The notes under the pieces were generated by a model. The model was given only the letters and a program-made list of their open reading frames with translations, was not told the origin of the DNA and ran no database searches. From NCBI RefSeq assembly GCF_006345805.1, contig NC_043000.1, positions 67,766,001 through 67,830,000 of the forward strand: 64,000 nt of DNA. The letters are read 5' to 3'. This DNA is from Octopus sinensis (lineage: Eukaryota). Position numbers and translations under genes: made by a program. Shown one piece after another: positions 1,248 to 43,378 of this stretch (its first letter is position 1; every line of letters starts with the position of its first letter).

Positions 1248-2078
1248 TTAATTACCATGATAACGAAGGTGCGAATAGTCAAAAGTGCTCATATAGTTGT
1301 TCTCTTGCAAATAGTAACGTGCCTGTGTTGAATGTATCTTTGGTTCAAGGTAAGCTGTTTTTAATAAGAATTTCATGCGTTCATGAACATCATTTATGTC
1401 TATCTCCTCTCCATTATACCCTGTCAGAACTGACAAGTCATCAAACCATCTGGTGTGGAAGCCAAGTGCAATTATCCCCGTATAAAGAGCGGTTGCCGCT
1501 ACAAGACTTGGTTTATAGTAACATTTTACGCTAAGAAAGTCATCATATAGCGCTAGTTCCAATACATAGTTGGTCATACTATACAAATCGTGATGGGGTT
1601 CCAATTTGAGAATAATATGGTAATACGAAAGAAAGACATAAGGAGTAACAAAAAACGTTTTACCTCTGAAACGGTTAATAACCAAAATATATATTCTACG
1701 AAGCTCATCTATAGAAGACTCTGGGTCGACTCTGGATGTCATAGCAACAATTGCAAAACCCTCATCTGTTTTAGCATTATATATTGTGTCAAAAGCAATT
1801 TTAATACATATAGCTCCAACACATTGCAGTTTTTCGCGTGAAAACAGCGGTGACTTTTCAGAAGACAAGAATAAGTCAAATAATGTAACTGATAGGTGTA
1901 AGATATCCATAAGACCGTAGTAATAATCTACACATGATATCATCCAGTTGACCACAACCTTACGATCTTCAGGGGAAAAAATATGGCGACCTTCTCGAAA
2001 ATAATTACGGACTTTCTTCTGTCGTCTTTCCATTTCAGATATACTGCCTAAATTTCTAACAACATCTGAAAAATCCAT
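1248..2078 (-). CDS. Divergent cyclin A/B-fold protein, copy 1 (276 aa, intronless CDS)
   Basis: Cyclin box pattern DRKVVVNWM..LHLSVTLFDLFL..KLQCVG matches MRAILVDWL..LHLAVNYIDRFL..KLQLVG. Second fold NYVLELALYD..YKPSLVAATAL and terminal TQARY..ENNYMS match cyclin A/B C-termini. Frame is uninterrupted. Confidence 0.92.
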   Translation of the reverse strand: MDFSDVVRNLGSISEMERRQKKVRNYFREGRHIFSPEDRKVVVNWMISCVDYYYGLMDILHLSVTLFDLFLSSEKSPLFSREKLQCVGAICIKIAFDTIYNAKTDEGFAIVAMTSRVDPESSIDELRRIYILVINRFRGKTFFVTPYVFLSYYHIILKLEPHHDLYSMTNYVLELALYDDFLSVKCYYKPSLVAATALYTGIIALGFHTRWFDDLSVLTGYNGEEIDINDVHERMKFLLKTAYLEPKIHSTQARYYLQENNYMSTFDYSHLRYHGN

Positions 2079-2544
2079 GGTCGTTCTTCTGTGAAATTAA
2101 ACGAAATTTGCTTGTTTAGAAAGTATAGCGAGGGGTGAAGCGGCGAAAACCTCAAAAATTTATCAATTGATTACGTCATTCAAATGTAACAATCAGTAAA
2201 TGTCGTTCTATTTTATTTGAATAATTAAAATCTTCAGTTGTATTTGGATATTAAACTATTGTTCTTTAACATTTGAAGTGTATTAAATTGTTTGTTATTT
2301 ACAATATGATAGTTAAGCAATACATAACATTAAAATTTAAAAATGAATATGTTTCAGTAAAGCTTAAATTCAGTTACGAAAATAACATGGAATGTTTTAA
2401 ATCTATTTAATGCCCAAAACTATCATAATAAAGTTGCAAAGCATAACCTTTATGATATTTGGGCCTATAAAACACACAAATCATAATTCTAACTTATTTG
2501 CAAAGTTTCTCAAATGCAAATGTATGTATTTAAGCAACATATAT

Positions 2545-2691
2545 GCATACATACATATATACACACGTACGTACGTACATACATACATGCATGCATACGT
2601 ACATACATACACACATATACATGCATACATACATACATACATACACACACATGCATACATACATATACGCACACATACATACATACATACA

Positions 2692-2723
<32 letters not shown>

Positions 2724-2838
2724 CACACACATGCATACATACATACATACATACATACAACATACATACAGACATACATAAATGCATATATACATACATT
2801 CATATACACACACATGCATACACACACACGCATACACA

Positions 2839-2870
<32 letters not shown>

Positions 2871-2875
2871 CAAAC
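2545..2875. repeat. (TACA)n/(CA)n compound microsatellite
   Basis: Directly visible. A shorter paralog lies at ~10578-10668. Confidence 0.97.
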
Positions 2876-3129
2876 AAATAGAAAGACATACAGGCAGACG
2901 GGCAGGTCGACGAACAGGCAGAAAGACCGACAGACAGACAAGAAGTTAGATATAGATATTGATACAAATATATGAATATATATTTGTATACATGTACATA
3001 TGTAATATGTACGTGTGTGTTTGTATTTCTATGTTTTTATGTGTGTGTGCGTGTTTTATTTCTATGTACATACATATGCATGTGTTTATGTGTGCATCTT
3101 TGTAAATGTACATATGTGTATATGTGTGC

Positions 3130-6776: not shown

Positions 6777-8493
6777 GGGATAGATACACCAGTGGATTCA
6801 TAGGATATAAGTTATTCCATAGACGGCTGTTATTACTTCTAACTTATCTTCACCTGTATATAAATATATATTGCCTATCATGCGTTTATAGTTCGCTTCA
6901 AACAAAAGAGTTTCCAAGTCCATCTTTGTCAACAATGTTTCTCAACCTCATCTTCAGGATATGGAGTAAATTAGGTTTCTTTGCTGCCATTTTTATGATG
7001 AGCACATTATTATTATAAAGATTCCCCCACCAGACCGGGAAAAGCCTTTGTTCTAAAATATCTAGAAATTCTTCCGTTGGCCTCATAATGTAATTCGAAA
7101 TAAACAACTTCTACCTTATAAAGTTGTATTTGTGTGTGCGTGTGTGTGTGTGTAAGCGTGTCTGTCTCTGTGTGTGTGTGTGCGCGCGCGTGTGTGTGTG
7201 CGCGCGCGTACGAGTGCGTACGTGTGCGTGCGTGCGGGTGTGTGTGTGTGTGAGCGTGCGTGTGTGTTTATTATTTTCACAATGCAAGTCCCCAAAAGGT
7301 ATCTTTTCTGTCTGGCTTTCACGTTTTGAAATTTTTTAATTAAATGAAAATTTCCAAATTTAGTATATTGATGTAATTTTTCACGTTGAATCTGTTGCTG
7401 TTATTCACTTGTTCCAGAAAAGTTTTAGAAAAATGTTATAGCGGTTTGAAGTTTGATTATTTTTACTCAATCAGAAAACAGGGTTTAGAAGCAGGCAATT
7501 TCTGCGTAATAACTGGAAGCTATATATTATGAAAAGTTGCAAAAAGACAAACCATATGTTATACTACTATAGTCCTGTTCATGTAAACAACTAATGACGA
7601 AAATTCAAAATCGAAAGTTTGATATACACTAGAGTTAGAGTCAGATTTTAAGGTTGAGGTTTAGGGTTAAACTTAGGATGTACAGCTAGAGTTAGGATTC
7701 AGGGTTGAGCTTTAGAATTACAATTAGGGTTTAGGGTTAGAGTAGCGTTGGAGTTTAAGGTTTGACTTTGAGTTTAGGATTAGGCTTAGGGTTTAGCGTT
7801 GGTGTTTAGGGTCGCGCTAACCCGTGGATGATCTGGGGTTATTCAATTAGTAACATTTTTCGTGAACATTTTTCTAAAGTTTCTTTGGAACAAATAAATA
7901 CGAAAATCAGATTCAGTGTGAAAACTTACATCAACATACCAAATTTGAAAATTTTGAATTTCAAACATTGTCACATCAACAGAAAAGGCCCATTAGTTTT
8001 TCTGTCTAACAAAAGAATGCAAAACAAACGTTCGAACAGGAATGTAAACAATTTAAAACGGAAAAAGTCCTCAATGAAGTTTGCGAATAAATTGTAATAA
8101 TACTGTAATAAATTGTAATAATACTGTACTAATAGTTCAGTTCATGTAAACAATTAATATATTTTTTGAAGCGAAAAATCAAAAACGTAAGTTCTGAATA
8201 TCGGTACATAGGGGTTGTAATAGTTCTAAGCAGACAACAGCTTGGATTGTTACTATGGAAATAGGCAGCAATATATATGTGGCTTACGACTAGCTGAAAT
8301 TGACCAAAATAGGCAAATTTTAAAAAGCTATCAAACTTTATTAATTCATTAATTTATAGCAAAAATGAATTTCATTTCCATAATTAGCATGAATAACTAC
8401 ATCAATACACCAAATTTTAAATCAACTGTAACAAAATTGAAGGAATTGAAAAGTGAAAGCCTAAGAGAAAAAGCCCACAAAGGATTTAAACTT

Positions 8494-9312
8494 TTAATAA
8501 ATGCTTGAATAATCAATAGCACTCACATGGTTGTTCTCTGGTAAATCGTATCTTGCCTGTGTTGAATGTTCCCTTTCTTCAAGACTAGCTGATGATAATA
8601 AGAATTTCATGCGTTCATGAACAACTTGCAACTGATCCTCAAATCCATTATACCCTGTGAGATCTGACAAGTCCTCAAACCATTCGTCACGGAATTTAAA
8701 GACAATTATCCCTGTATAAAGAGCAGCTGCCGCTACAAGACTTGGTGGAAAGTAATTTCTTACGCTGAGAAAGTCATCATATAGCGCTAGTTCCACTAAA
8801 TAGTTCATCATACTATACAAATCGTGACGAGGTTCTAATTTGAGAATAATCTGGTAATACGAAACGAAGACATAGGGAGTCATAAAAAACATCCTACCAT
8901 GAAAACGTTCAGAAACCGAAATGTGCATCCTATGAAGTTCTTCTGAAGAAGACTCTGGGTCAACTCTAGATGTCATATGAATAACATCATTACCCTCATC
9001 TGTTACACGATTATATATTGTGTCAAAGGCAATTCTAAGACATGTAGCTCCAACACATTGCAGTTTTTCGCTTGAAATCGGTGGTGAGCTTCTAGAAGAC
9101 AGGAATAAGTCAAACAATGCAACTGACAGGTGGATGACATCCAAAACGCTCTCGTAATAATCTGCGCATGCTATCATCCAGTTGACCACAGCCTTACGAT
9201 CTTCAGGCTAAAAATTATGCTGACCATCTCGAAAATAATTACGGACTCTTTTTTGCCGTCTTTCCATTTCATATACATTGTTTAAATTTCTAACAACCTG
9301 TGAAAAATTCAT
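8494..9312 (-). pseudogene. Divergent cyclin A/B-fold gene, copy 2, nonsense codon at position 35
   Basis: ATG at 9312 (MNFSQVVRNL...) is in frame with the 8494-9189 ORF. TAG at 9208-9210 where copy 3 has CAG. About 76% aa identity to copy 3 by manual count. Confidence 0.88.
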
Positions 9313-9633
9313 GGTCGATCTTCTGCGAAATTAAACGAAATATCTCTCACTTGATTACGTCATTCAAACGTAACAATCAGTAAATGTCGTTCCAGTTTAT
9401 TTGAATGACCAAAATCTTAACTTGTATTTGGATATTAAACTATTTATTATTCTTTAACATTTGAAGTGTACTAAATTGATTGTTATTTACAATATGATAG
9501 TTAAGCAATATATAACCTTGAAATTATAAAACTGAACATGTGTTACAATTCAATTACGAACATAGCATGAAAATAGCTATTTAATGCCTAAACCTATCAT
9601 AATAAAATTGCAAGGCATAACCTTCATGATATT

Positions 9634-11520: not shown

Positions 11521-12844
11521 ATGTCATGAGAATAAAAATTTAAGCAACACATTTCAAAATAACTCCAAACAGAACATTTCACAAAACAGCGAACTTAAGG
11601 TTGAGGAAAAGATCCACAAGTCAATTTTAAAATCACCTGCCATCGAAAAAAAACTAGAAGTGGTAGAATTGTACATTTTCCCAAAAGACTTTCTCAGTTC
11701 GTTTGAGTATTTTGCTCATGGATTTTTATATTTCCGGAATCGTTTTTGGAAAAAGATTTTACAATTTTTTTCAAGGAACTTCTATAAATTATATTGAACT
11801 TTATGATGAATATTTTGATAAACTTTCCATGAAAGCTGTATTGTGATAAAACCGTGATGCGCGGTTATTTTCGTTTGTTCAACATGTCGATACATTTCTA
11901 TATTTGTAAAAATGTGTAACTTTGACTTACTTAAATATTATTTCCAACTGTGTATTGAAATATGTTTGTATTATTATTCTTTGTTCGCAAAATTGAGAAA
12001 CTTTTTCTGGTTGAGGGATTATGTAGCAAGCCTTAATAAACCTCTATCGACGGTGATATGACGTTATGGTCATGTTGGCCGAATATGTGTAATTATTAGT
12101 TTCTCCATTGGTTAAAATTACTGTCCATATTTGAATTCTAATTTTCCTCAAAGAGAAATTTTTCCCGAAATACGGTTCTTAAAATTCAGATACCAGCAGA
12201 TATAAAAACCCTGATTTTGGGGAAATAAGTCAGTGTTCGTTGGTCGTCTATATGATTCCACGACACTCACTTTCATGAGATTTGGTTATTATGATGCCAA
12301 GTTGTTGTTTTTTTGTTTAATTCAACAATGCTATTTTGAATTGTTGTTTTACACTTTTTTTTAGCTTCCTTATGAAAGGATCCAAAGTTTATGTCGTAAA
12401 CTCTCTACGACAGTTTCTTTTTTAAATATCTTTTGACTTTTCATATAAAAATGTATTGTAAATATTATTAAATGCACGTAAATAAATTGAAACTTATTTC
12501 TGTACTTATTGAAACTGTTACTATAACGGTAAAAATGAGTGAGCTTGTATTTCTGGTTGAGGGATTATGTAATTCAACATACATGCACGTTCAGCGTCCT
12601 GGTGTATAACTCACCACAGCGTTTACATAGTCTGAGCTAGAATTTATGTATGGTGATTAAATACTTATAATTAAGTTATAAGTGTCTGATTTATCACCAC
12701 AGATTCCTGCTAAAGAAGTATTTATATTTATCATATTTTCTAGTCGTAAGTAGCATGTCATCATTTAACTCATCGAACACGTTATAAACAGATTAAATTA
12801 TTTAATTGTTATAGGTAGCCGCCCACTATCTTTTTTCTCTATAC

Positions 12845-13135
12845 GCCGTTATAACAGGATGAAACATAGGCGTATTTTTATTATCTACAAATGATGGCTC
12901 AGTCCATGGAATGGCGCTACATTCCTTTATGCAAGGCTTAAGAAGCTCAATTTAGCGATTAGTATAGATTTTGGGGGAGGACAAGGCTGTTATTTTTCTG
13001 GATTTCTGGAACATAGTTGTGCTTTAAGCAGCGAGCGGTATATTGAGATACTCAGAAATCTTTGAGTAAGAAGCCGAATAAGAATCTGCGAACGATTAAC
13101 ATTCACAATGACAATATGTAACTCCACACGTCTTT
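12845..13135 (+). mobile_element. Mariner fragment homologous to 3697-3990
   Basis: Aligns by eye to the fossil in unit 1. Cut off at the right by a Penelope-like element. Confidence 0.8.
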
Positions 13136-15850
13136 AGCAACAATACCCCAACTTTCCACCACATCTACATTGAAAATTTGCACCAAACCAGTGAAATTAT
13201 CCAGTGGTTCAATTCTCTACGCCCTAAGCACACCTTTGAATTTATACAAATCTACAATGATCAATACTACTCCAGCATATACATTATTCTTCTAAATAAT
13301 GCCCTAATTTTCGCCAAAAAACATTCCAACCTATCTCGTGACGATATTGATATAATATTAGCAGCCTGCCGCAATGTCATACTGTCTGATGGGAAATCCT
13401 AGACCCGCAAGGATACCCCCAATTTTTTTGACATCCTCATGGAGGCCAGTGACTTCGCCCAAGTTACGGACCTTAGAAGGCATTACCTACTTAACGGTCT
13501 CCATGAACAATTCACTAACATCTCTGGTAGTCTATACAGAAACAACGCTCTGTTCGCAATCCAAAATTCTAGCAACAGTAATCGAACAGACTAGAAAAAT
13601 ATTAAGAGGTTTTTAAAAAACGTCGGCCTTGGCATCTCCTGTAACAACACAAAAACTGCTAATTTCTTGGACATAACCCTAGATTTGCAAAAACCAAAGC
13701 TTCTACTCATACCACAAACCTCGAGGAAAATCTAAACTACGTGAACTTCTCCTCCAGATACCACCACACTCTGTCCTAAAATCTATTGTGGAAAACGTTT
13801 CCTAACGGATTTCCTCACTATCTGTTAGTAAAGATTTATTCGATCAATATGCAGAATATTGCAATTGTGCCTTACACGTGCCAGCTATAATAACTCAATC
13901 GAATATATCCCCATGTGGAATATTCCTCTCTGCACTAAACCCAGAACTGAAACCAGTTCACCCACCACCACCATATAATGAACGTAAAATTTCCCCTATC
14001 CCACCGCTCCGATACTCGTCCAAATTACACTCCCACCGAAACAGACACCAGCGTGCACCTCCAAAACCCTATCCCCACCCAATTAACACCACTAATCGGA
14101 TTAAACGAACAAGAACCCAGGACGTTATCTGGTTCCACCCTTCGCTCTTAATGTTTAGACTTGAGTACTTAAACTCTTCTTCACCCTTACTCGAAAAATA
14201 TTTCCCTAAATCTATCCCCCTTAGGAAAATATTTAACCCCCAATCTATAAAATTGTTCTACTCCACCACCACCAACAACATTGCTGGTATTTTCAAAAAC
14301 AAGGAACTCGGAAATCCACAACCATCAAACCCCAACCTAAATAATTTAACTCAACATAACCCCCAGCTCCATACATATAAACCCAAAACACCAATTGACC
14401 CGCTCAACAACACTAATCCCCATAACTCTAACTATAATTCCGCTACCAACACCCGATCCTTACATTTACCACAACGCCCAACTATACCTCTTGTAAAAAT
14501 AAAGAACGACACAGACGATACCACCCACCGAACACGATAATTATCATATCATACAGTCCCACAATACCACCCTTAACTCCCTCAAAATATTGATCTTAAT
14601 GCCAGTAATAATAATGAACCTAACACCAGTTCGTCACTAAATAACAATCCCATTACAAATTCATCCGGAACATCTCCTACGAACCTATGCAGCTTCAGAC
14701 GACTAACCTCTATCCTTTAGACAACCGTTGTCTCACAAAAGAACATCATTTACAAGTGTACAGTATCAGCTGCCAACTGTGGCTACATATACATCGATCC
14801 ATGCAGCACCACCTTCAAAGCTAGAGTGAACAACAACTACTCCAGTTTCAAATCCCAAACATAATCCAACAGTACATCGTTATCTCAGCTTATCAATAAA
14901 CTAAAGATCAATTAAACTCCTTACACTCTCAAGTGGCCCATAGTATCCCACGCCAAACCACTCAGCAGCTGTTATAACAAATGTGATATCTGCATAGCCG
15001 AAGTCTTAGCTACTGTGCAATCCACGGATTGTCTTAATGAACGCAGCAGTATAACTTTTACCTGCAAACATCGACCACTAACTCTATTCTCAAAATACAA
15101 ATAACAACTCCATACCGCTTCTTTTTCCCCTAACCTTCATAAATTTTTGACCAAAAATATTTCCCCACCATCTTCCCTCTACATTATCCTTTTTTCAAAT
15201 TTTACTCCCCTTGCTAATTTCTATGATTGAATAGCCCTATTGAATACTACCTGTCAAATTACCTTACTTAAATTCCTGTCTTCTCACTCCCTTGTTTTTT
15301 TTTTCTTTTTTCCTTTTTATTCCTAATTCCTCTCTACATTTATATTCTCTACTCCTACTGTATTCTCTTCAGATTCTGATTGAATCTTTCATGTGTTAAC
15401 ATGTACCTCCTTGAGACAATGTAAACTTTCATTGGCCTGAAGAGTAGCCTGCGGTATACACCTCGCTTGGATATTTACCACTTCCGAGGTTCCGCTCACT
15501 ATGAAACACATGTAGCCTGGATCTTATCGACTCCCTTCCTTAAATCTTATTTTCTTATTCGCATGCCCGGCAACCCTAGTTGCCTACCGTGAAATATAAA
15601 AATAATACATTTTTCAATTTATCATATTTCAATAAGAATAAAATCCACAACTTTCTGTCTCATTAACCATTATTGTCCCTGAAAGTTGTTTCTTATATTT
15701 ACTACGAATTGCTTGAAGCTAACCTTCTTCCAACACTTCGATCATTGGATCTTATATTTATCTCTAGAAACTTTGTTGGGATATTATGGTAGATAATTAT
15801 AGGACTTTTAGATAACTGTAGTAGATTTGTTGAGCGGAAAGCTTTAGCGT
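13135..15850 (+). mobile_element. Degenerate Penelope-like element (RT, linker, GIY-YIG, 3' pLTR)
   Basis: SEIIQWFN..IDIILAACRNVILSDG..LYRNNAL..NFLDITLDL is a PLE RT. IYKCTV..YIYID..LKWPIV..CDIC is a GIY-YIG remnant. A hammerhead lies in the tail. Confidence 0.85.
15434..15517 (+). ncRNA. Type I hammerhead ribozyme in Penelope pLTR
   Basis: GGC-CUGAAGA-GUAG...CUAU-GAAA-C(ACAU)G-UA-GCC. Core at 15437-15443 and 15503-15506. Predicted cleavage after A15514. Confidence 0.7.
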
Positions 15851-19014: not shown

Positions 19015-21805
19015 TTACCTATCAGGCCGTTATAGTTCGTTTCAAACAATAATGTTTCCAATTTCATCGTTATCAACAATGTTTCCAGGTTATCTCAACC
19101 TCATCTTCAGGATATGGAATAACTTTGGTTTCTTTGCTGGCATTTTTATAGTGACCACATTATTATAATAAAGATTCTCCCGCCACAGCAGGGAAAACGT
19201 TTGTCTTAAAATATCAAAAATTTTTCCGATGACCTGATACTGTAATTTGAAATAAACAAGTGTGTGTGTGTTTAGTATTCTTACAATACAAGTCCCAAAA
19301 GGGATTTTTTCTGTCTGGTGTTAAATTTTTGAAATTTTAAAATTAAATGAAAATTTTCAAATTCGGTATATTGGACGCAATTTTTCACGTTGAATATGTT
19401 ACTGTTGTTCACTTGTTCCAGAAAGGTTTTAGAAAATGTTACAGTGGTTTAAAGTTTGATTATTTTATCCAATCACAAAACGGGATTTGGAAGCTGGCAG
19501 TTTCTGCGTAATAACTTTTATTAAATAAATGGAAGCAATATATTATGACATCGAAAGTTGCAAAAAGATTTGAAGTTTTAATCGGTTTAAATGAATAAAG
19601 TCATGTTAAACGTTGGAACAGACAATATAAAAAGAAAAATCCTTAATTTTTTTTTTTTTTAGCGGAACATTACAAAAATACAAACTGTATGTTATACTAC
19701 TGTAATTCGGTTCATGTAAACAATTAATGGCGAAAATTCAAAAACGAAAGTTTGATATACACAAGCGTTAGAGTCAGATTTTAGGGTTGGGATTTAGGGT
19801 TAGAATTTGTGTTTACGGTTAGAGTTCGGGTTTAGGGATGAAGTTTGGGGTTAGAATTAGGATTTAAGTTTTAGGGTTAGAGTTAGGATGTAGCGTTGGA
19901 GTTTAAGGTTAGAATTAGGGCTTAGAGTTAGACTTGGAACTTAGGGCTGGCGTTTAGGGCCACTCTGACCCATGGATAACCTGGGGTTAATCAATTAGTA
20001 ACATTTTTTGTGAACATTTTAAAAAAATTTTTCTGGAACAAGTAAATATGAAAATCAGATTCAGCATGAAAAATTACATCAACATACCAAATTTGAAAAG
20101 TTAAAATTTCTAACACTGTCACAGCAACAGAAAAGACCCATTAGTTTTTCTGTCTGACAAAAGAATGCAAAACAAATGTTCGAACAGGAATGTAAACAAT
20201 TTAAATAAGAAAATTTCTCAATGAAATTTGTTTGCGAAAAATTACAAAGGAATAAACTGTAGTAATACTGTACTAATAGTTCAATTCATGTAAACAATAG
20301 ATTTTTTTGTGGCGAAAATTCAAGAACGGGAGTTGAGAATAGAGGTACATAGTGGCTGTAGCAATTTTAAGCAGACAACTGCGTGTCTTGTTACAATGAA
20401 AACTGGGAGCAATATGTTTGTGGCTTACGATAGGATAAAATTACCCAAAATAGGCAAATTTTAAGAAGTTATTAAACTTTTGTATTTATTAATTTATGGC
20501 AAAAATTAATTTCATCTCCATAACTAGCATGCACAACTACATGAATATACCAAATTTGAAATCAAATGTAACAAAATTAAAGGAATTGAAAAGTGAGAGC
20601 GAAGCAGAAAAGAACTCACAAAATTTTTTAACTTTTATTAAAGGTTTGAATAATCAAGAGCGCTCATATAGTTGCTCTCTTTAAGACCATATCTTGCCTG
20701 TGTTGTATGTTCCCTTGGTTCAAGATAAACTGTTTTTAATAAGAAAATCATGCGTTCATGAACAATTAGCATGTCTTCCTCCTTTCCATTATACGGTGTT
20801 AGAATTGACAAATCCTTAAACCATCTCGTGTGGAAGTCAAAGACAATTATCCCCGTATAAAGAGCAGCTGCCGCTACAAGACTTGGTTTAAAGTAATTTT
20901 TTAGGCTAAGAAAGTCATCATATAATGCTAGTTCCAATAAATAATTGGTCATACTATGCAAATCGTGACGAGGTTTCAATTTGAGAATAATATGGTAATA
21001 CGAAAGGAAGACATATGGAGTAACAAAAAACGTTTTACCATTGAAACGTTTAGAAACCAAAACGTACATTCTATGAAGCTCATCTAAAGAAGACTCTGGG
21101 TCGACTTTCGAAGTCATAGTAATAATTTCCAGACCCTCATCGGTTACACGATTATATATCGTGTCAAAAGCAATTCTAAGACATATAGCTCCGACACATT
21201 GCAGTTTTTCGCATGAAATCGGCGGTGATCTTCTAGAAGACAGGAATAAGTCAAATAATGCAACTGATAGGTGGATGACATCCAAAACACTGGACCAATT
21301 ATCTGCGCATGCTATCATCCAGTTGACCACAGCCTTACGATCTTCAGGCTGAAAATTATGGTGACCATCTCGAAAATAATTACGGACTTTCTTCTGTCGT
21401 CTTTCATGTTCATATACATTTCTTAAATTTCTAACAACATCTGAAAAATCCATGGTCGTTCTTCTGCAAAATTACACGAAACTTGCTTGAATAGAAAGTA
21501 TAGTGAAGTGTGAAGTGGTGAAAACCACAAAAATTTCTCAGTTGATTGCGTCATTCAAACGTAACAATCAGCAAGTGTCGTTGCCAGTTTATTTGAATAA
21601 TTAAAATCTTCACTTGGATTTGGATGTTAAACTATTTATTGATCTTTAACATTTGAAGTGTATTAAACTGTTTATTATTCACAACATGATTGTTAAGCAA
21701 CGTATAACATTCAAATTTAAAAATCAAATATGCATTTCAATAAAGCTTAAATTCAGTTACGAAAATAACTTGAAATGTTTTTAAATCTATTTAATGCCTA
21801 AAATT
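19015..21805. repeat. Duplicated cyclin module, unit 3
   Basis: Collinear with units 1 and 2. Homology ends at atctatttaatgcctaaa, where a Gypsy remnant begins. Confidence 0.9.
20638..21453 (-). CDS. Divergent cyclin A/B-fold protein, copy 3 (271 aa, intronless CDS)
   Basis: Same cyclin box and second-fold motifs. 199/271 aa identical to copy 1 (manual count). AATAAA about 150 nt downstream (plus-strand tttatt 20485-20490). Confidence 0.92.
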   Translation of the reverse strand: MDFSDVVRNLRNVYEHERRQKKVRNYFRDGHHNFQPEDRKAVVNWMIACADNWSSVLDVIHLSVALFDLFLSSRRSPPISCEKLQCVGAICLRIAFDTIYNRVTDEGLEIITMTSKVDPESSLDELHRMYVLVSKRFNGKTFFVTPYVFLSYYHIILKLKPRHDLHSMTNYLLELALYDDFLSLKNYFKPSLVAAAALYTGIIVFDFHTRWFKDLSILTPYNGKEEDMLIVHERMIFLLKTVYLEPREHTTQARYGLKESNYMSALDYSNL

Positions 21806-23850: not shown

Positions 23851-23974
23851 GCACCCATGTAACAGCTTTTGTTATATTTCTGCTGCTTTTACATAAAGCA
23901 TATTACTCTACCTCTGGTATTTGAGTACTCTTTTTTCCACCTTGTTTCACATTTATGTGCTCACTCCGGTAGAC

Positions 23975-24268
<294 letters not shown>

Positions 24269-24277
24269 CATGAAAAA

Positions 24278-25814
24278 ATGCGAGCAAGGGAAATATTATT
24301 CTTAAGATTATAAACCTGGAAAATTACACAAGTTATTACACTTGGAAAAGTTAGGACAACTTACTACATTTGGTAAAGTGGAGAATAAGAAAATTTTACT
24401 TAAAATATTGCAGCTAAGGATAAAATTTCAAATATAATATTTAGAGTAAAGATTGTTTGCCAACATAACATGGCATTCCTGGTTTAGGACGAATATTTCT
24501 ATAATTTAGCACCAGGAGACGTCGTCTCCAGCTGGCTATAAGACACGATCTGTCTCCTTATATTTTCGAACAAAGATCGTGTCCTATAGCCAGCTGGAGA
24601 CGATGTATCCTGAGGCTAAATTACAGCAACATTTGTCCTAAGCCAGGACTGCTATGTTATGTTAGCAAACAATCTTTACTCCAAAATACTGTTACTGAAT
24701 ATATATCGTTGTGAGATTTACAAATAGTAATTTTTTAATAATATTTAGACTTAGAAAATATTAGCTTTCATTAAAACTAAAAATTTTATTTCAAGTTATT
24801 ACTTCTATTTGTTATTACTTGTTACTTTTATTAAAAACTAGCAGTATCGCCCGGCGTTGCTCGGGTTTGTAAGGGAAATAACTATAAAGCATTTTTAGAT
24901 AGTTATAGCCAAAATATGGGAAAAAAATGATGGTAAATTTTTTTGAGAGTTAAAAAGGTGGAGTTGCGTCCCCTAGACAGTCTGTGGTTTGTGTTTCTGA
25001 TTATCGACCCCATGTCGAATTTATCGATTTTTTTCAGAACTGGGGGAACTTTTCAAAATTTTCGCTGCGTTAGTTTTGAATTATGACATTGGGCTATGTG
25101 TGTGTCAAGTTTCATCAGAATCGGTTGAAAGCCGTGGTCAGAGTGAGGGTACAACCAAACAGACACACAGAAACACACACAGACAAACTGCCGTTTATAT
25201 ATAGAGAGATGAACAAAAATAACTCAAAATATTTTTGCACTTAAAAAATTCATTTCTTTAATTATTAATTAATAATTAGAACTTTGAAAATAGATTATAA
25301 AAAAATAATAATAGTACATAATTAGTTAGTACAATAAATAGAATAAAATAAAAATTAGTTATATATTACAGTAAAATCTACCTATAGCAACAAACTCACA
25401 GTAAAATTTGCTTGAGTTATTGTTGAAGTTATTGCCAAGTGTTCACATTTTTAGTCTTGACCCAATGCCTATTTTTTACGTAATGAATTTGCCTACCATA
25501 TATACTATTCTACTTAGCATAAAACTCTAGCTATATTGGTACTTCTGGCTCTCATTTTTTTAAGTATTCTAGTGTGTAAATATTTTAACAAAATGATGGT
25601 ACCTTTTTTAATTATAATGTTACTTTCTAAATTAAAATCAAATAATTTTTAATATTCAAATTTTATCTTTAGCTGCAATATTTTAAGTAAAATTTTTTTT
25701 GGTTTTGCACTTTACCTGATGTAATAACTTGTGCCAAATTTTTCCAAGTGTAATAACTTGTCCTGTAGTTTTCCAGGTTTATAACTTTAAGAAAATTATT
25801 TCTGTTGCTCGCAT
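24278..25814. mobile_element. Foldback/MITE-like element with ~165-bp inverted arms and an internal hairpin (24444-24681)
   Basis: 24278-24440 is an imperfect reverse complement of 25650-25814. Inner palindrome has ~108-bp arms and a 22-nt loop. Confidence 0.7.
24838..25209 (-). mobile_element. Non-autonomous Helitron
   Basis: Minus strand A|TC start. Ends in hairpin cccgagcaacgccggg plus CTAG|T. Confidence 0.8.
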
Positions 25815-35756: not shown

Positions 35757-38700
35757 ATACACACACACACACACACACATTTACTACTTCTCTTACTTCA
35801 TTCTCTCTTAACCGGTTGCGTTCTTTCAAATGTTTCTATCGGTGTCATTTTGGAAAAATAAATAGATACTGTTAGTCTTCGGTGAAAATTACAAATACAC
35901 CATACTCACTAAACACTATCTTAAAGTACGTTTTTATGTTATTGAATTGCTCTAAACGAATCTGACAATAAAAATGTTGGAAATTTATTTTTTTTTTAAG
36001 ATATTAACAAAATTTGTCGGATCTATTTTCATGCCGTCGGAGCTACTTTTATATCTGTTTACGTCGTTATGTGTATGAATATATTATTAAATGTACTGTT
36101 GTCTGATATTTTACGCATGCATAGAATTCTTGCAATAACAGACGTAAAAAAGTATGAAAATTTCAGAAACTTTACGCATTCAACTGCATGAAAATAGGTT
36201 CGATTGATTTTATTATTACCTTAAAAAATACTAAATTTCCGACATTTTTATGGTCGAATTCGTTTACAGCAATTCAACAACATAAAAATCGCACTTTAAG
36301 ATAGTATTTAGCGAGTATAGTGAAATTGTAAATAAATACACATGATAAATATTTACAATTAATACCATGAAAACTTCCCGTTCAGAGAAATTAGCTCAAA
36401 TACTAGCTGAATTGTCTCAAAATTTTCACTGAATAATTGTCATAAATATTCACGCTTTCATCAGTACACTATGCCCAGAAAAGAAAGGACAACAACCTGT
36501 CCCGAAAAAATTCCCGTTCACAAAAGATTACTGAGCAAAGACAACAGACGCTAATTGAAGAAAACAGACAAGGACTTAGCTCTTCTCAATGTCTCGAAAT
36601 AAAGCGAAGGAGAATGCAAGAAACCCGTGCAATGGAAACGCCAGAAGAAACAGAGGCACGGAGAAATGCAAATCGGCTGAGACAGGAAACCCGTGCAATG
36701 GAAAGACCAGAAGATTCAGAAGCACGGAGGAATGAGAATCAGATGACAACACAGGAAACCCATGCAATGGAAAGAACAGGCAAAAGAGAAGCACGAAGGA
36801 ACGTGAATCGGCTGAGAATACAGAAAAGCCGTGCAATGGAAACGCCACAAGAAACAGAAGCACAGACAAATACTGATCGGCTGAGGAAACAGGACTCTAG
36901 GGAAAATACGTCGCTGCCACATATTCAGCAGCGAAAGCAAACAACCAGGCACGATACCAATCGAGACTTCGTCAGCAAAGAACTGACACTGAGAGAATGG
37001 CTATGGAAGTCGATGTGGCAGATTTTCATGAGAAAGAACGAAACCCAAGTCTTATGTTGCACTACTGTGGAAACATTTTTAACAGAACATGCCCTGACTG
37101 CAGAGCTTACTTTTGGGATGCTGAGAAAACTACCCACTGCTGTGGCAAAGGAAAAATTAGCCCCCAGAATTAATAGCTAAGTACTATAATGTCAGTCTAT
37201 GCGGTCAAAGGTTTCTGATCAAAATTCGTGACTAGGATAATTTACTGGCTATGGTTTCGCTTGGGACTGGATAATCCACCAGTTGGACCACAGGGTGATA
37301 GCACTTTTATGCCTACTTTCAAGATTCAAAGAAAGTTGTACTACTGCTTAGGAAGCCTCCTACCAGCAGTAAATAGGAAGCCAGTCTAGGCACAGCTCTA
37401 ATTCGTTGACACTGAAAATGAGATGAGAAACAGGTTGTCATTCAGAGGAGCTAACAATAACCTTAATGAGAACATCCTGCTAGACTTGCAGAAAGCACTA
37501 CATTTACACAATCCATATGTCAAAATTTTAAACAGGCTATTGATATAATCAAGGAATACCCTGCACCAGGAAAATGGTCTACCGGTGATTTATAAGTCAT
37601 GACAAACGGCTTATTCCTACTGGGTCACATGAGAGAACCTATAATCCACCGACTGCATCACAAGTTGCTGTGATCATGGTGGGATATACCTATAATCCAA
37701 GCATTAAGCCTGCGGACCTTGTTGTGCAGTACAGAGAGAGAGCAATGGGAAGTTAGACTACATTAGTCAAATCCACAGAAGCTATGGCCCTCTTCATTAA
37801 GTACTTGTTTCCCTATGAGGAAGATGGTTGGAATGTGTTCTTGAAAGACAATGACCAAAGCAAAAACATCACTGAATGTGACTTTTATTCTAATCAGCTT
37901 CAGGCAAGAAAGGACAAGTTCAATGGCATAATGAAAAGTAGACGTCTGATGCAACAATATGCAGTAGATCAATATGCAAAGATAGAGCAAGATCGATTAC
38001 ACTTCCTGAAAACTAACCAGAAACAACTTAAGGTTGAAAAGTACCAAGGCCTTCTGGATGCTATTGCAAATGGTGGCATGAATGACGTAGGGTCTAAAAT
38101 CATTCTTCCACCATCACATACTGGTTCTCCTCAGTTTTACATGGAGTGTTTCCAAGCTGGAATGGCTCTGGTGAGAGAGTCTGGAAAGCCAGACTACTTT
38201 ATCACTATGACAACCAACCCGAAGTGAACTGAGATAACGGAAGCCCTGCTTGGTTCTGGGAACAATGGGCATATATAGGCTTTGGACTCAGGGTATAAGG
38301 ATATGAAAGGAATCCACACTGACAACGTTGTCTATAAGGGAATTCTTTAAGAAAATTATAGGTGTAGGCGTGGCTGCGTGGTAAGTAGCTTGCTTACCAA
38401 CCACATGGTTCCGAGTTCAGTCCCACTGCGTGGCACCTTGGGCATGTGTCTTCTACTATAGCCACAGGCTGACCAAAGCCTTGTGAGTGGATTTGGTAGA
38501 CAGAAACTGAAAGAAGCCAGTCATATATATGTATGTGTTTGTCTGTATTTGTCTCCTCACATCACTTGACAACTGATGCTGGTGTGTTTACGTCCCCATA
38601 ACTTAGTGGTTCGGCAAAATAGACCGATAGAATAAGTACTAGGCTTACAAAGAATAAGTCCTGGGGTCGATTTGCTTGACTAAAGGCAGTGCTCCAGCAT

Positions 38701-40930: not shown

Positions 40931-43378
40931 TAATAATAATAATCATCATTTAACGTCCGTTTTCCATGCTAGCATGGGTTGGACGGTTCGACCAGGGTCT
41001 GGAAGTCATAGAGGCTGCACCAGGCTCTAGTCTGATTTGGCAGTGTTTCTACAGCTGGATGCCCTTCCTAACACCAACCACTCCGTGAGTGTAGTGGGTG
41101 TTTTTTGCGTGCCACCGGCACAGGGGCCAGTGCGGGCTGGCGAATGGCCACGATCGGTTGGTGCTTTTACATGTCACCGACACGAACGCCAGCCAGGCGG
41201 CGCTGGCATCTGCCTCATTCGGACGGTGCTTTTTACGTGTCACCGGCACGGGTGTCTTAACTACAATTTCCATTTGAATTTTTATTTTGATGTTGATGTA
41301 CTTGACTCAATAGGTCTCCTTAAGAACAGGTCACTCAACAATCCAAGGTTAGCACAGCAGGCCGTCCTGCGAGCCATGAACTCACTTCATTTGTCGGGTC
41401 TTCGAAGTCACAGCATATCTCCAGAGGTCTTGGTCTTTTGTCATAGCCTCTGTGAGACTCAGAGTACAAAGGCCATGCTTGACCACCTCATCCTATGTCT
41501 TCCTGAGTCTACCTCTACCCCAGATTCCTTCAACAGCTTGGGAGTGGCACTTCTTCACTCATCTCACCTCATCCATCCGTAGTACATGACCATACCAACT
41601 CAATCGTCTCTCCTGCACGCTGTATCCGATGCTTCTTATGCCCAACAATTCTCTCAGGGCGCTTACACTCTGTCATGCATGGACACTGACATTACACATC
41701 CAGTGGATCATGCTAGTTTCATTTCTTTCAAGCCTACGCATGTCCTCCACAGTCACAGCCCATGTTTCACTACCGTGAAGCATGGCAGTTTGCACACATG
41801 CGTCATACAATCTACCTTTCACTCTGAGCGAGAGGCCCTTTGTTGCCAGTAGGGGAAGAAGCTTCCTAAACTTTGCCCAGGCTATTCTTATTCTAGTGGT
41901 AACACTCTCTGAGCATCCACCCCTGCTACTGACACCTAGATAGCAGAAACTATCAACTACTTCTAGTTTCTCCCCAAGAAGTGTAATGGAATCTGTTCTC
42001 TGAGTATCAATGGTGTCTATTGCCCCTGTGCATCTGCAGCACACGAAAGCTATCTTCTCAGTTAATTTTCCTTTGATGTTGCTGCACCTCTTATGTGTCC
42101 ATAGCTTACACTGGGGACATCTTATGGAGTTTCTACCTACACCTTTTCTACAGATCAAGCAGGGCCACCTACCTGAAGGGGTGTGTGATGAGTTTGCCTT
42201 CCTACTTACTAGAACTTTGGCCTTTTGATTCTAAACCTAGCTTCCACAACTGAAATTTCTTTTCTAGTTCTGATAGTGATTCTGCTACGAGGGCTAGGTC
42301 ATCAGCATAGAGGAGCTCCCAGGGACAACCCGTCTTAAATTCTTCTGTTATTGCCTGGAGGACTATGATGAATAGAAGGGGGCTGAGGGCTGAGCCTTGG
42401 TGGACGCCAACTTCTCCCTGGAATTCTTCACTGTACTCATTGCCTATCCTAACCTTACTAACAGCCTCTCTGTAAAGGGCCTGTACAGCCCTTATTAACC
42501 ATTTGTCAATCTCCAGTTTCCGCATCGCCCACCAGATAGGGGATTGGGGGACCCTGTCAAAGGCTTTCTCTAAGTTCACAAAAGCTAAGTATAGGGGTTT
42601 ATCTTTGGCTAGGTATTTCTCCTGCAGTTGTCGGACTATGAATATGGCATCAGTGGTTCTTCTGCCAGACACAAAACCAAACTGCATCTCATCTAGGCTA
42701 ACTCTCTCCCTAATTAGTTGGGCTATGACCCTCTCCGTGACCTTCATTACCTGATCCAGCAGTTTGATACCCCTGTAGTTGTTTCTATCTAGAGCATCAC
42801 CTTTACCCTTGTAGCAATTGACTATGGTGCTGCTACGCTAGTCATTGGGTATGACTCCATCATGAACTACTTGGTTTACAATGCGGGTGACTAGGCCGTA
42901 GCCCACACCACCAGATGTTTTAAGCATCTCAGCAGTGATTCCTGATGGGCCGGGGGCTTTTCCTGACTTCATACCCTTAATTGCCTTAACTACTAGGGAG
43001 CTATCTATACAGATAGCTGGTCCTTCTACTGGGTCAACATTTGGCAGGCTCTCCTCCTCCCATTCATTCTCTACATTCAGCAGTCTTTCATAGTGGCTCC
43101 TCTAAGCCTCTTTCTTTTCAGAATCACTTAAAACAAGTGCCCCATCATCCATTCGAACACATTTCTCTCCTGTGACATCGCAATTTTCTCTCACACACTG
43201 TCTTGCAATCCAAAATACCTCAGCTCTTTGGTCCTCACGTGTCTGGACATTGGCAAACTTCTTTTCCGTTTCGCTCTTGGCTATGTATACCTGCTGCCCA
43301 GCCTCCCTTTTGGCTACCTGGTACCGTTCCCTGCTACCCCCATCCTTCCAGGCTTTAATAATAAATGCCCTGATGCAG
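40930..43378 (-). mobile_element. Degenerate 5'-truncated RTE LINE, same family as the intact copy
   Basis: ORF pieces 43102-43380, 42202-42747 (YADD) and 41673-42158 (PHD). 3' UTR motif ctggatgcccttcctaac and (GAT/TAT)n tail. Confidence 0.93.

What the first reader, a model, noticed from the sequence alone, without database searches (positions are those of the whole stretch)
20638..21453. All copies have lost the invariant CDK-contacting Lys and Glu: candidate pseudo-cyclins
Seen: where cyclin A has LASKFEEIY all three read IAFDTIY (no Lys). Where it has LRMEHLV they read RRIYILV, HRMHISV and HRMYVLV. DRFL is DLFL and MRAIL is DRKVV/DRKAV. The Arg-Asp pair, Trp and LQ of the fold are kept. 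Known: Lys266 and Glu295 of human cyclin A2 contact the CDK and are near-invariant; MRAIL/W/LQ form the RxL docking patch. Inference: a folded cyclin that does not activate canonical CDKs, acting as a decoy, scaffold or partner of a co-diverged kinase.
Basis: partly seen in the sequence, partly recalled or inferred. Interest (0 to 1): 0.85.

Follow-up and report, generated by a model that had tools for sequence, protein, structure and literature searches.

The report
Octopus cyclin-A-derived genes lacking CDK-contact residues
Octopuses carry a small tandem cluster of fast-evolving, intron-free genes descended from cyclin A. The genes keep the cyclin fold but have lost every hallmark residue that cyclins use to grip and switch on their kinase, so they probably do something other than drive the cell cycle.

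Summary
Window 20638-21453 (minus strand) is an intact 271-codon ORF, one of three cyclin-like copies in the window. The window is Octopus sinensis chromosome CM016862.1.

**Lost residues**
- Four alignment methods agree that no Lys or Arg occupies the cyclin A2 Lys266 position. Three of them show a 2-residue deletion there.
- Glu295 is Tyr or His. Phe304 is Gly.
- Half of the RxL docking patch is also replaced.
- All of the nearest 144 non-family cyclin clusters keep at least one of Lys266 and Glu295; 143 have Lys, 142 have Glu.

**What is kept**
- Cyclin_N and Cyclin_C pass Pfam thresholds.
- A deep-alignment AlphaFold model (pLDDT 93.8) matches cyclin A2 at TM 0.82.

**What the family is**
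- It is known only from octopods.
- Its coding sequence has no introns, whereas octopus cyclin A has nine coding exons. This fits a 5'-truncated retrocopy that was later duplicated in tandem.
- ORFs are preserved against neutral expectation (P about 1% per pair).
- The promoter is more conserved than the coding sequence.
- Nonsynonymous sites diverge about twice as fast as the flanks.

**Exceptions and limits**
- Copy 2 is a pseudogene. Its TAG at codon 35 is shared with O. vulgaris.
- Loss of CDK activation is the best inference but is untested.
- The closest precedent is cyclin F.
- An RxL-decoy role is disfavoured.

The parts
20638..21453 (-). Copy 3 (the finding): intact 271-codon single-exon ORF. 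It encodes an N-terminal helix plus two cyclin folds, with no N-terminal regulatory region.
   Evidence: ORF list. Pfam Cyclin_N and Cyclin_C. AF2 pLDDT 93.8. Foldseek top hit cyclin A2. The CDS is 100% identical in O. vulgaris. No protein record of its own exists.
21166..21171 (-). Ala95|Phe96 junction in helix alpha3. This is the site of the 2-residue deletion that removes the Ser265-Lys266 equivalents of cyclin A2.
   Evidence: phmmer, MAFFT and hhalign. Codon coordinates checked.
21064..21066 (-). Tyr130, at the position of cyclin A2 Glu295. It is Tyr in copy 1 (1689-1691) and His in copy 2 (8923-8925).
21037..21039 (-). Gly139, at the position of cyclin A2 Phe304.
   Evidence: The role of Phe304 is from PMC12356897.
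21310..21342 (-). DRKAVVNWMIA, equivalent to MRAILVDWLVE. Met210 is Asp, Ile213 is Ala and Glu220 is Ala. Arg211 and Trp217 are kept.
   Evidence: column counts. coordinates.
21533..21610 (-). Conserved upstream element with paired bZIP/CRE-like half sites (…GAACGACA…GTTACGTTTGAATGACGCAATCAA…). The core is at 21542-21564.
   Evidence: Alignment A6. Mean pairwise identity is 91%, against 82% for the CDS. The pattern occurs only at the three copies in the window, with 0 expected by chance.
21454..21481 (-). Conserved leader immediately 5' of the ATG (TTTCGTGTAATTTTGCAGAAGAACGACC). It could be the 5'UTR or a 3' splice site of a non-coding first exon.
   Evidence: 91% mean identity. A similar leader lies upstream of the distant paralog P0007.
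8494..9312 (-). Copy 2: a pseudogene. It has 273 codons with an in-frame TAG at codon 35 (9208-9210). In O. sinensis it also has a ~50-nt deletion between the promoter element and the ATG.
   Evidence: The same TAG is in O. vulgaris. The deletion is visible. Its near-twin, copy 4 (P0002), has CAG at that codon.
1248..2078 (-). Copy 1: intact 276-codon ORF. The ortholog of O. bimaculoides P0004.
   Evidence: The O. vulgaris ortholog differs at 5 nonsynonymous and 2 synonymous codons.
2167..2189 (-). Copy 1 promoter core element.
9351..9373 (-). Copy 2 promoter core element.

Best explanation
These are real protein-coding genes of a family known so far only from octopods. Copies 1 and 3, and a fourth copy outside the window, are intact. 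Copy 2 is dead.

The family most likely began as a 5'-truncated processed retrocopy of cyclin A. That copy acquired its own bZIP/CRE-type promoter and was then duplicated in tandem.

The protein keeps the whole cyclin architecture: the N-terminal helix, two five-helix folds and the buried Arg-Asp pair. It has no N-terminal degron region. It has lost all three signature CDK-contact residues (Lys266 by a 2-residue deletion, Glu295, Phe304) and half of the RxL docking patch.

The most likely mode of action is therefore that of a CDK-independent cyclin-fold adaptor. In this reading a stable helical scaffold uses new, rapidly evolving surfaces to bind other partners, as the cyclin domain of cyclin F does.

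What is shown: the fold homology, the residue losses, ORF maintenance, promoter conservation and fast protein evolution. What is inferred: the retrocopy origin. What is inferred and untested: CDK independence and the adaptor role.
For: - Identity and context: the window is 100% identical to O. sinensis CM016862.1. There are three copies in the window and a fourth nearby.
- Fold: Pfam hits. The family profile scores 66 bits against cyclin A2, 46 against D1, 41 against B1, 40 against F and 31 against E1. AF2 pLDDT 93.8 and pTM 0.91. Foldseek TM 0.82 to cyclin A2.
- Residue losses.
- Functional meaning of the residues: PMC12356897, PMC3590450, PMC6971155.
- Shift of constraint: in the family, N-fold identity is 0.45 (alpha4 0.31, alpha5 0.34) and C-fold identity is 0.51. 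In canonical cyclins the values are 0.67 and 0.40.
- Retrocopy origin: canonical octopus cyclin A has 9 coding exons over 12 kb on another chromosome. At least 6 of its introns fall in the region that is uninterrupted in the family. The family protein starts about residue 195 of cyclin A.
- Selection: P(no new stop | observed divergence) is 0.8-1.7% per pair. Promoter identity is 91% against 82% for the CDS. Between O. sinensis and O. bimaculoides, nonsynonymous sites diverge about twice as fast as the flanks (p=4e-8 and 8e-5). Ortholog dN/dS is 1.2-1.6.
- Restricted distribution: 6 family representatives at E<=1e-35, then a gap to 8e-22. Named members are Octopus species and Argonauta.
Against: - No expression or protein evidence was found. 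Copy 3 has no protein record, and no transcript-derived member exists in the 15-billion-protein collection.
- Whole-gene dN/dS is not statistically distinguishable from 1 in most pairs. On that test alone, relaxed constraint cannot be excluded.
- The N-terminal helix, which in cyclin A contacts the CDK, is retained and well conserved. A remodelled CDK interface therefore remains possible.
- A basic residue (Arg/Lys93) sits three residues before Phe96 in the close subgroup. Whether it could substitute for Lys266 cannot be judged without model coordinates.
- The high AF2 confidence depends on canonical cyclins in the alignment. The family-only alignment gave pLDDT 47.7.
- The faster CDS divergence could partly reflect constraint on the flanks or gene conversion between paralogs.
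Confidence: 0.55

Rival explanations
1. The proteins still bind and regulate a kinase, through a remodelled interface. The partner would be either a co-evolved octopus CDK paralog or an atypical CDK, so they would be divergent but genuine cyclins.
For: - The full cyclin architecture, including the CDK-contacting N-terminal helix, is kept, and that helix is conserved (family identity 0.50).
- Co-evolving CDK1 paralog and cyclin B pairs with an altered PSTAIRE exist in Oikopleura (PMC8832800).
- CCNG2 lacks the Lys but has another basic residue and is still counted as a cyclin (PMC6971155).
- The close subgroup has Arg/Lys93 near the deletion.
- Fast evolution of alpha4 and alpha5 could reflect co-evolution with a partner.
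Against: - All three signature contacts are gone at once.
- Residues at the Glu295 position vary within the family (Y, H, F, and V, L, Y in distant members). They are not fixed to a new solution.
- No kinase gene lies in the window or in the fetched neighbouring loci.
- None of the 144 nearest cyclin representatives shows a comparable loss.
Confidence: 0.25
2. The intact copies are non-functional relics. In this reading they are retro-pseudogenes, or genes in the course of decay, whose open frames persist by chance or by gene conversion.
For: - Whole-gene dN/dS is about 0.6-1.6 and mostly not different from 1.
- Copy 2 is already dead.
- P0004 is C-terminally truncated, and the Logan fragment P0012 looks frameshifted.
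- No transcript evidence was found.
- The RefSeq models here are inconsistent, including a chimeric XP_029634929.2.
Against: - The probability of escaping stops is 0.8-1.7% per pair and about 0 against the distant paralog. Even so, more than 10 members in at least 4 species keep ORFs of about 257-276 codons without frameshifts.
- The promoter and leader are more conserved than the CDS, and are recognisable even in paralogs with dS>1.
- Helix alpha3 and the fold core show pN/pS of 0.1-0.8.
- dN exceeds the divergence of the flanks. Decay alone does not predict this.
Confidence: 0.1
3. The proteins act as decoys. They would soak up RxL-containing substrates or CDK inhibitors through the hydrophobic patch without recruiting a kinase.
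For: - Trp217 and Leu253/Gln254 of the patch are kept.
- There is no degron region, so the protein could be stable.
- Cyclin F uses its patch in a CDK-independent way (PMC12356897).
Against: - Met210 (M in 106/106 canonical cyclins) is Asp. Ile213 is Ala or Val. Glu220, which by established knowledge of cyclin A-p27 and RxL peptide structures holds the Arg of RxL, is Ala or Ser. Arg250 is Cys or Ser in most members.
- A charged residue in the patch together with loss of the acidic anchor argues against classic RxL binding.
Confidence: 0.1

Closest known systems
A-type cyclins (human cyclin A2, PDB 1FIN/4I3Z; octopus cyclin A XP protein P0255)
   Same: - Best sequence and structure match: profile E=3e-17 and Foldseek TM 0.82.
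- Same N-terminal helix plus two cyclin folds.
- Arg211-Asp240 pair, Trp217 and Leu253/Gln254 are kept.
   Different: - No N-terminal ~190 residues, so no Cyclin_N2 domain or D-box region.
- No introns in the CDS, against 9 coding exons.
- Lys266 is deleted, and Glu295, Phe304, Met210, Glu220 and Arg241 are replaced.
- A 3-residue insertion lies before alpha3 and a 6-residue insertion in alpha3-alpha4.
- The conservation pattern is inverted.
Cyclin F (CCNF/FBXO1)
   Same: [quoted passage not shown]
- It uses the cyclin fold as a protein-binding module.
   Different: - Cyclin F has an F-box and is an SCF substrate receptor that keeps a working hydrophobic patch.
- The octopus proteins are bare cyclin folds of about 270 aa with an altered patch, and are closer in sequence to cyclin A (66 vs 40 bits).
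- The loss is independent.
CNTD1 and other atypical or orphan cyclins
   Same: - Cyclin-box proteins with non-cell-cycle roles, often in the germline. CNTD1 acts in meiotic crossover maturation (PMC6971155).
- From my own knowledge, a short CNTD1 form has been reported to act without a CDK.
   Different: - According to PMC6971155, human atypical cyclins retain the Lys-Glu pair. The octopus family does not.
- No sequence affinity to these families was seen.
Viral cyclins (gammaherpesvirus v-cyclins, giant-virus cyclins)
   Same: Short, intronless proteins that consist only of the cyclin box.
   Different: - Weaker structural match: best TM 0.66, E 3e-6.
- CDK6-v-cyclin keeps the Lys-Glu contacts (PMC3590450).
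- Nothing here points to a viral origin.
Oikopleura CDK1d:Cyclin Ba/b co-evolved pair
   Same: Lineage-specific duplication and rapid evolution at the cyclin-CDK interface, with germline-restricted expression (PMC8832800).
   Different: There the cyclin still pairs with a CDK1 paralog. Here no partner kinase is known, and the hallmark contacts are deleted rather than changed.

Membership tests
Cyclin-box fold superfamily (Pfam Cyclin_N PF00134 + Cyclin_C PF02984) | Both domain HMMs above the gathering threshold | tested here: met
   Cyclin_N scores 41 bits (cutoff 23) but matches only profile positions 4-84 of 127. Cyclin_C scores 37.1 bits (cutoff 22).
Cyclin-box fold superfamily | Two five-helix cyclin folds superposable on a solved cyclin | tested here: met
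   AF2 pLDDT 93.8 and pTM 0.91 with a 114-sequence alignment. Foldseek TM 0.82, rmsd 2.8 Å over 271 columns to cyclin A2. Caveat: the family-only alignment gave pLDDT 47.7.
Cyclin-box fold superfamily | Buried Arg211-Asp240 pair of the N-terminal fold | tested here: met
   Arg39 and Asp68 are invariant in the family and in canonical cyclins.
Cyclins in the strict sense (CDK activators; criterion of PMC6971155) | Lys-Glu pair (cyclin A2 Lys266/Glu295; cyclin B1 Lys257/Glu286) | tested here: not met
   The Lys position is deleted or non-basic in four alignment methods, and the Glu position is Tyr or His. The same holds in all 12 family members aligned.
Cyclins in the strict sense | Aromatic residue at Phe304 (third CDK-interface position) | tested here: not met
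   Gly in all window copies. Y, I, H or F in distant members. Aromatic in 143 of 144 nearest cyclins.
Cyclins in the strict sense | Binds and activates a CDK | not testable with these tools
   Needs complex modelling or a bench assay.
A/B-type mitotic cyclins | N-terminal regulatory region with destruction box or KEN box | tested here: not met
   The protein starts at the N-terminal helix. There is no KEN box. The only RxxLxxxxN match (residue 162) lies inside a helix of the C-terminal fold.
A/B-type mitotic cyclins | MRAIL hydrophobic patch with Glu220 for RxL docking | tested here: not met
   The segment reads DRKAV or DRKVV, and Glu220 is Ala or Ser. Trp217 and Leu253/Gln254 are kept.
Cyclin F-like SCF receptors | F-box N-terminal to the cyclin domain | tested here: not met
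   Only Cyclin_N and Cyclin_C hits were found. The protein has no residues N-terminal to the cyclin core.
Processed pseudogene | Intronless copy of a multi-exon parent with disabling mutations and no constraint | tested here: inconclusive
   The copies are intronless against a 9-exon parent. Copy 2 has a stop codon, so this feature is met for copy 2. Copies 1 and 3 have intact ORFs against a roughly 1% neutral expectation, and a conserved promoter, so it is not met for them.

The most novel reading that the evidence does not exclude
An octopod-specific cyclin-fold family, born from a cyclin A retrocopy, has been recruited to a CDK-independent job and is under recurrent positive selection. One example would be a germline or early-embryo adaptor engaged in a genetic conflict such as sperm competition, meiotic drive or transposon control. 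This would make it a second, independent 'cyclin without a CDK' after cyclin F.
Probability: 0.2. Interest if true: 0.7.

Novelty: new variant of a known kind. Interest (0 to 1): 0.45.

Why it matters
The Lys-Glu pair is kept in all human cyclins except cyclin F (CCNG2 has another basic residue in place of the Lys) and has been proposed as part of the definition of a cyclin. A second, independent lineage that keeps the whole cyclin A fold but has deleted these contacts offers a natural experiment on what a cyclin fold can do without a CDK. This lineage has also been amplified and maintained for at least the age of the Octopus-Argonauta split.

It is also a clear case of a lineage-specific, retrocopy-derived, fast-evolving gene family in cephalopods, whose genome novelties are of wide interest.

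On the practical side, current RefSeq names ('cyclin-B2-1-like', 'G2/mitotic-specific cyclin-A') and one chimeric gene model are misleading and should not be used to infer cell-cycle function.

Tried and rejected
- **Family-only AF2 run.** An 8-sequence alignment gave pLDDT 47.7, too poor to use. It was replaced by a 114-sequence alignment.
- **Viral origin.** Foldseek against BFVD gives weaker matches than cellular cyclin A, TM 0.66 against 0.82. Rejected.
- **Transposon-captured fragment.** Copies occur only as a local cluster on one chromosome in each species, and the duplicated unit includes promoter and 3' flank. Tandem duplication fits better than dispersal. LINE and Helitron sequences in the window are separate insertions.
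- **Sequencing error for the copy 2 stop.** The same TAG is in the independent O. vulgaris assembly. Rejected.
- **Expression evidence from Logan contigs of the distant member P0011.** The contigs contain the promoter region and look genomic, so they are no evidence either way. The run accessions are not mentioned in any searchable paper, so the species is unknown.
- **Literature on these loci.** No paper mentions the LOC identifiers or an octopus cyclin expansion.
- **D-box.** The single RxxLxxxxN match sits in a structured helix with family-invariant His163 and Leu165. It was not accepted as a degron.
- **Residue-level structural superposition on cyclin A2.** This would show which side chain occupies the Lys266 site, but the tools do not expose model coordinates.
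- **Search for an octopus-specific CDK paralog.** No remaining search could address it.
Full report
**What is at the coordinates.** Window 20638-21453 on the minus strand is an intact 271-codon ORF. Two more copies lie on the same strand: 1248-2078 (276 codons) and 8494-9312 (273 codons with an in-frame TAG at codon 35). tblastn finds exactly these three copies in the window. The window is 100% identical over 31.4 kb to Octopus sinensis assembly GCA_006345805.1, chromosome CM016862.1. A fourth, intact copy (RefSeq XP_029634928.1, P0002) lies about 10 kb beyond the window start and is 94% identical in DNA to copy 2. The rest of the window is mostly transposon sequence, including a full-length LINE, reverse-transcriptase fragments and a Helitron fragment.

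**Check of the observation.** The ORF matches Pfam Cyclin_N (41 bits, cutoff 23) and Cyclin_C (37.1 bits, cutoff 22). I aligned the proteins to cyclin A2 or to canonical cyclins in four ways:
- phmmer against PDB chains
- a family profile against PDB chains
- MAFFT with 106 canonical A/B-type cyclins
- hhalign of a 12-member family profile against a 35-member canonical profile (probability 99.9%)

Three of the four place a two-residue deletion exactly at the 'S/A-K' of ...LIASKFEEIY.... The fourth puts Thr98 opposite Lys266. None places a basic residue there. All four put Tyr or His opposite Glu295.

Column counts in the 106 canonical sequences are K 106/106 and E 106/106. Among the 144 nearest non-family representatives from a 1.84-billion-protein library they are K 143 / R 1 and E 142 / Q 1 / D 1, and none lacks both. 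The octopus's own canonical cyclin A (P0255) has all the standard residues.

- Phe304 is Gly in all three copies. It is F, Y or W in 106/106 canonical cyclins and aromatic in 143/144 of the nearest representatives.
- Lys266, Glu295 and Phe304 are exactly the three positions mutated to alanine to stop human cyclins binding Cdk1. The same paper notes that cyclin F lacks them and does not bind CDKs (PMC12356897).
- The Lys-Glu pair hydrogen-bonds the backbone just before the PSTAIRE helix and is conserved in all solved CDK-cyclin pairs (PMC3590450).
- A review proposes the pair as a defining feature of cyclins, with cyclin F the only human protein lacking both (PMC6971155).
- In the docking patch, Trp217 and Leu253/Gln254 are kept. 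Met210 (M in 106/106) is Asp, Ile213 is Ala or Val, Glu220 (E104/D2) is Ala or Ser, Arg250 is mostly Cys or Ser, and Arg241 is Leu.
- By established knowledge of cyclin A-RxL peptide structures, Glu220 anchors the Arg of the motif and Met210, Ile213 and Leu214 form the pocket. Classic RxL docking is therefore doubtful.

**Fold.**
- With only eight family sequences, AlphaFold gave an unusable model with pLDDT 47.7.
- With 106 canonical cyclins added, the model has pLDDT 93.8 and pTM 0.91. It shows an N-terminal helix (3-19) and two five-helix folds.
- Foldseek against the PDB returns cyclin A2 chains first (TM 0.82, rmsd 2.8 Å over the full length), followed by cyclin B1.
- Viral cyclins match less well, with best TM 0.66.
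- The family profile scores cyclin A2 at 66 bits, D1 at 46, B1 at 41, F at 40 and E1 at 31. The family is therefore closest to A-type cyclins.
- The high confidence is borrowed from the canonical sequences in the alignment. Model coordinates are not exposed, so I could not see which side chain fills the Lys266 site.
- The only nearby basic residue is Arg/Lys93, three residues before Phe96. It is present only in the close subgroup and is Trp or Ser in distant members.

**Family and origin.**
- A profile search of 1.84 billion cluster representatives found six family representatives at E<=1e-35, then a gap to ordinary cyclins at 8e-22.
- Named members come from Octopus sinensis, O. vulgaris, O. 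bimaculoides and Argonauta hians. Two further members (P0011, P0280) come from unidentified samples.
- In O. bimaculoides, three members are single-exon genes within 130 kb on one chromosome.
- Canonical O. bimaculoides cyclin A is a 457-aa, nine-coding-exon gene spanning 12 kb on another chromosome. At least six of its introns fall in the region that is uninterrupted in the family.
- The family protein begins at about residue 195 of cyclin A, just at the N-terminal helix.
- From this I infer a 5'-truncated processed retrocopy of cyclin A followed by tandem duplication. The duplicated unit carries about 350 nt of 5' flank and about 1 kb of 3' flank.

**Are the copies alive?**
- Copy 2 is not. 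Its TAG at codon 35 is also present in the independent O. vulgaris assembly, so it is real and predates that split. Its near-twin, copy 4, has CAG at that codon. In O. sinensis, copy 2 also lacks about 50 nt between the promoter element and the ATG.
- For the intact copies, pairwise dN/dS is 0.63-0.86 between paralogs and 1.2-1.6 between O. sinensis and O. bimaculoides orthologs, with dS of 0.1-0.16. It is mostly not distinguishable from 1 by Fisher tests. On its own this could mean neutrality.

Three observations argue against neutrality:
- Random substitutions at the observed density leave the frame open in only 0.8-1.7% of simulations per pair, and never at the divergence of the distant paralog. 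Yet more than ten members keep frames of 257-276 codons without frameshifts.
- The 78-nt upstream element and the leader before the ATG are 91% identical on average across paralogs and species, against 82% for the CDS and 83% for third codon positions. Related TGACGT/TTACGC motifs and a similar leader are recognisable upstream of paralogs with dS>1.
- Between species, nonsynonymous sites have diverged about twice as fast as the aligned non-coding flanks: 0.166 against 0.074 (p=4e-8), and 0.150 against 0.084 (p=8e-5).

The simplest reading is an expressed gene with a conserved fold core and rapidly, perhaps adaptively, changing surfaces. Helix alpha3 shows pN/pS of 0.1-0.8. Constraint on the flanks or gene conversion could contribute, and a formal site-model test needs more species.

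**Where constraint has moved.**
- In canonical A/B cyclins, the N-terminal fold is much better conserved than the C-terminal fold (mean pairwise identity 0.67 against 0.40). Its CDK-contact helices score alpha3 0.77, alpha4 0.71 and alpha5 0.55.
- In the octopus family the order is reversed (0.45 against 0.51). Alpha4 (0.31) and alpha5 (0.34) are the least conserved parts.
- Family-invariant residues that differ from canonical cyclins cluster in the C-terminal fold (Thr145, Tyr147, Ile156-Leu157, His163, Leu165, Tyr178, Asp214, Leu218-Thr219, Tyr221).

This is what one expects if the CDK interface is no longer the selected surface.

**Mechanism.** The best-supported reading (confidence about 0.55) is a CDK-independent cyclin-fold adaptor. 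The protein would be a stable helical scaffold with no degron region, whose old kinase-binding face has been dismantled and whose function now rests on other surfaces. The cyclin domain of cyclin F is the only well-known precedent.

The main rival (about 0.25) is a remodelled interface with a co-evolved or atypical kinase. Co-evolving CDK1 and cyclin B paralogs in Oikopleura are a precedent (PMC8832800), and the conserved N-terminal helix fits this reading. The non-functional-relic reading and the RxL-decoy reading are each given about 0.1, for the reasons above. The CRE/PAR-type promoter and the intronless, tandem, fast-evolving character are reminiscent of germline-expressed genes. That is a recalled resemblance, not a result.

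**Annotation issues.**
- RefSeq XP_029634929.2 ('cyclin-B2-1-like', P0001) joins the first ~36 codons of copy 3 to the rest of copy 1 across 20 kb.
- Copy 3 has no protein record of its own.
- The O. vulgaris model for copy 2 (CAI9721534.1, P0006) skips the stop by using a different 5' exon.
- Names such as 'cyclin-B2-1-like' and 'G2/mitotic-specific cyclin-A' imply a function that the sequence does not support.

**Novelty and interest.** No paper in the searchable library mentions these loci or an octopus cyclin expansion. Cyclin-box proteins that have left the CDK business are known, so this is a new variant of a known kind rather than a new category. Its distinctive features are complete loss of the Lys/Glu/Phe triad in an otherwise cyclin-A-like protein, a retrocopy origin, tandem amplification, and evidence for selection together with rapid change. 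With no expression or interaction data, I score interest at 0.45.

Noticed in passing
window 9208-9210 (copy 2, minus strand); L011 13443-14261: Copy 2 carries an in-frame TAG at codon 35 where its near-twin copy 4 has CAG. The same TAG is in the O. vulgaris assembly, so the pseudogene is older than the O. sinensis / O. vulgaris split.
   Followed up: yes
window 1248-2078 and 20638-21453; L002 10001-30206: RefSeq XP_029634929.2 ('cyclin-B2-1-like') is a chimeric model. It joins the first ~36 codons of copy 3 to the body of copy 1 across 20 kb and skips copy 2. Copy 3 has no protein record of its own.
   Followed up: partly
window 21533-21610, 9351-9373, 2167-2189 (minus strand): The conserved upstream element has paired bZIP/CRE-like half sites (GTTACGTTTGAATGACGTAATCAA). 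It is more conserved than the coding sequence (91% against 82%). Related motifs lie upstream of distant paralogs in L005 and L007.
   Followed up: partly
window 21454-21481 (minus strand): The leader just before the ATG ends in TAATTTTGCAG|AAGAACGACC-ATG. This looks like a 3' splice site, so there may be a non-coding first exon upstream. It could not be tested without transcripts.
   Followed up: no
window 9310-9360 vs L011 13368-13415: In O. sinensis, copy 2 lacks about 50 nt between the promoter element and the ATG. All other copies have this segment, and O. vulgaris appears to have about 47 extra nt at this point.
   Followed up: partly
window 55486-58608 (minus strand): Intact 1040-aa LINE ORF with endonuclease, reverse transcriptase and a PHD-like finger. 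It may be a recently active element. A related degraded copy lies at 41673-43560.
   Followed up: partly
window 37784-38227 (+): Helitron helicase-like N-terminal domain fragment (Pfam E=4e-27).
   Followed up: no
window 12024-13510 vs L001 4188-5660 / L002 35132-36604: Part of the spacer between copies 3 and 2 is 88-93% identical to the spacer between copy 1 and copy 4. This hints that the array grew by duplication of a two-gene block or shares a repeat. The dS values of the gene pairs (0.20 for copies 1/3, 0.065 for copies 2/4) do not fit a single simple event.
   Followed up: no
window 2410-2975 and 23869-24313: Long imperfect microsatellite tracts ((TATG/CATA)n-like) give spurious ORFs rich in YIHT and MYVC repeats next to copies 1 and 3.
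   Followed up: no
window 20634-20640 and 8490-8496 (minus strand): Poly(A)-signal-like hexamers overlap the stop codons: TAATAAA in copy 3 and ATTAAA in copy 2. However, homology between copies continues for about 1 kb downstream, so the true 3' end is unknown.
   Followed up: no
L007-L010 (Logan ERR12921337, ERR12921340, SRR9969974, SRR8281680) and L006 (ENA ERZ21867824): The most divergent family members (P0011, P0280; 31-33% identical to copy 3) come from unidentified samples. If the species is not an octopod, the family is older than stated.
   Followed up: partly
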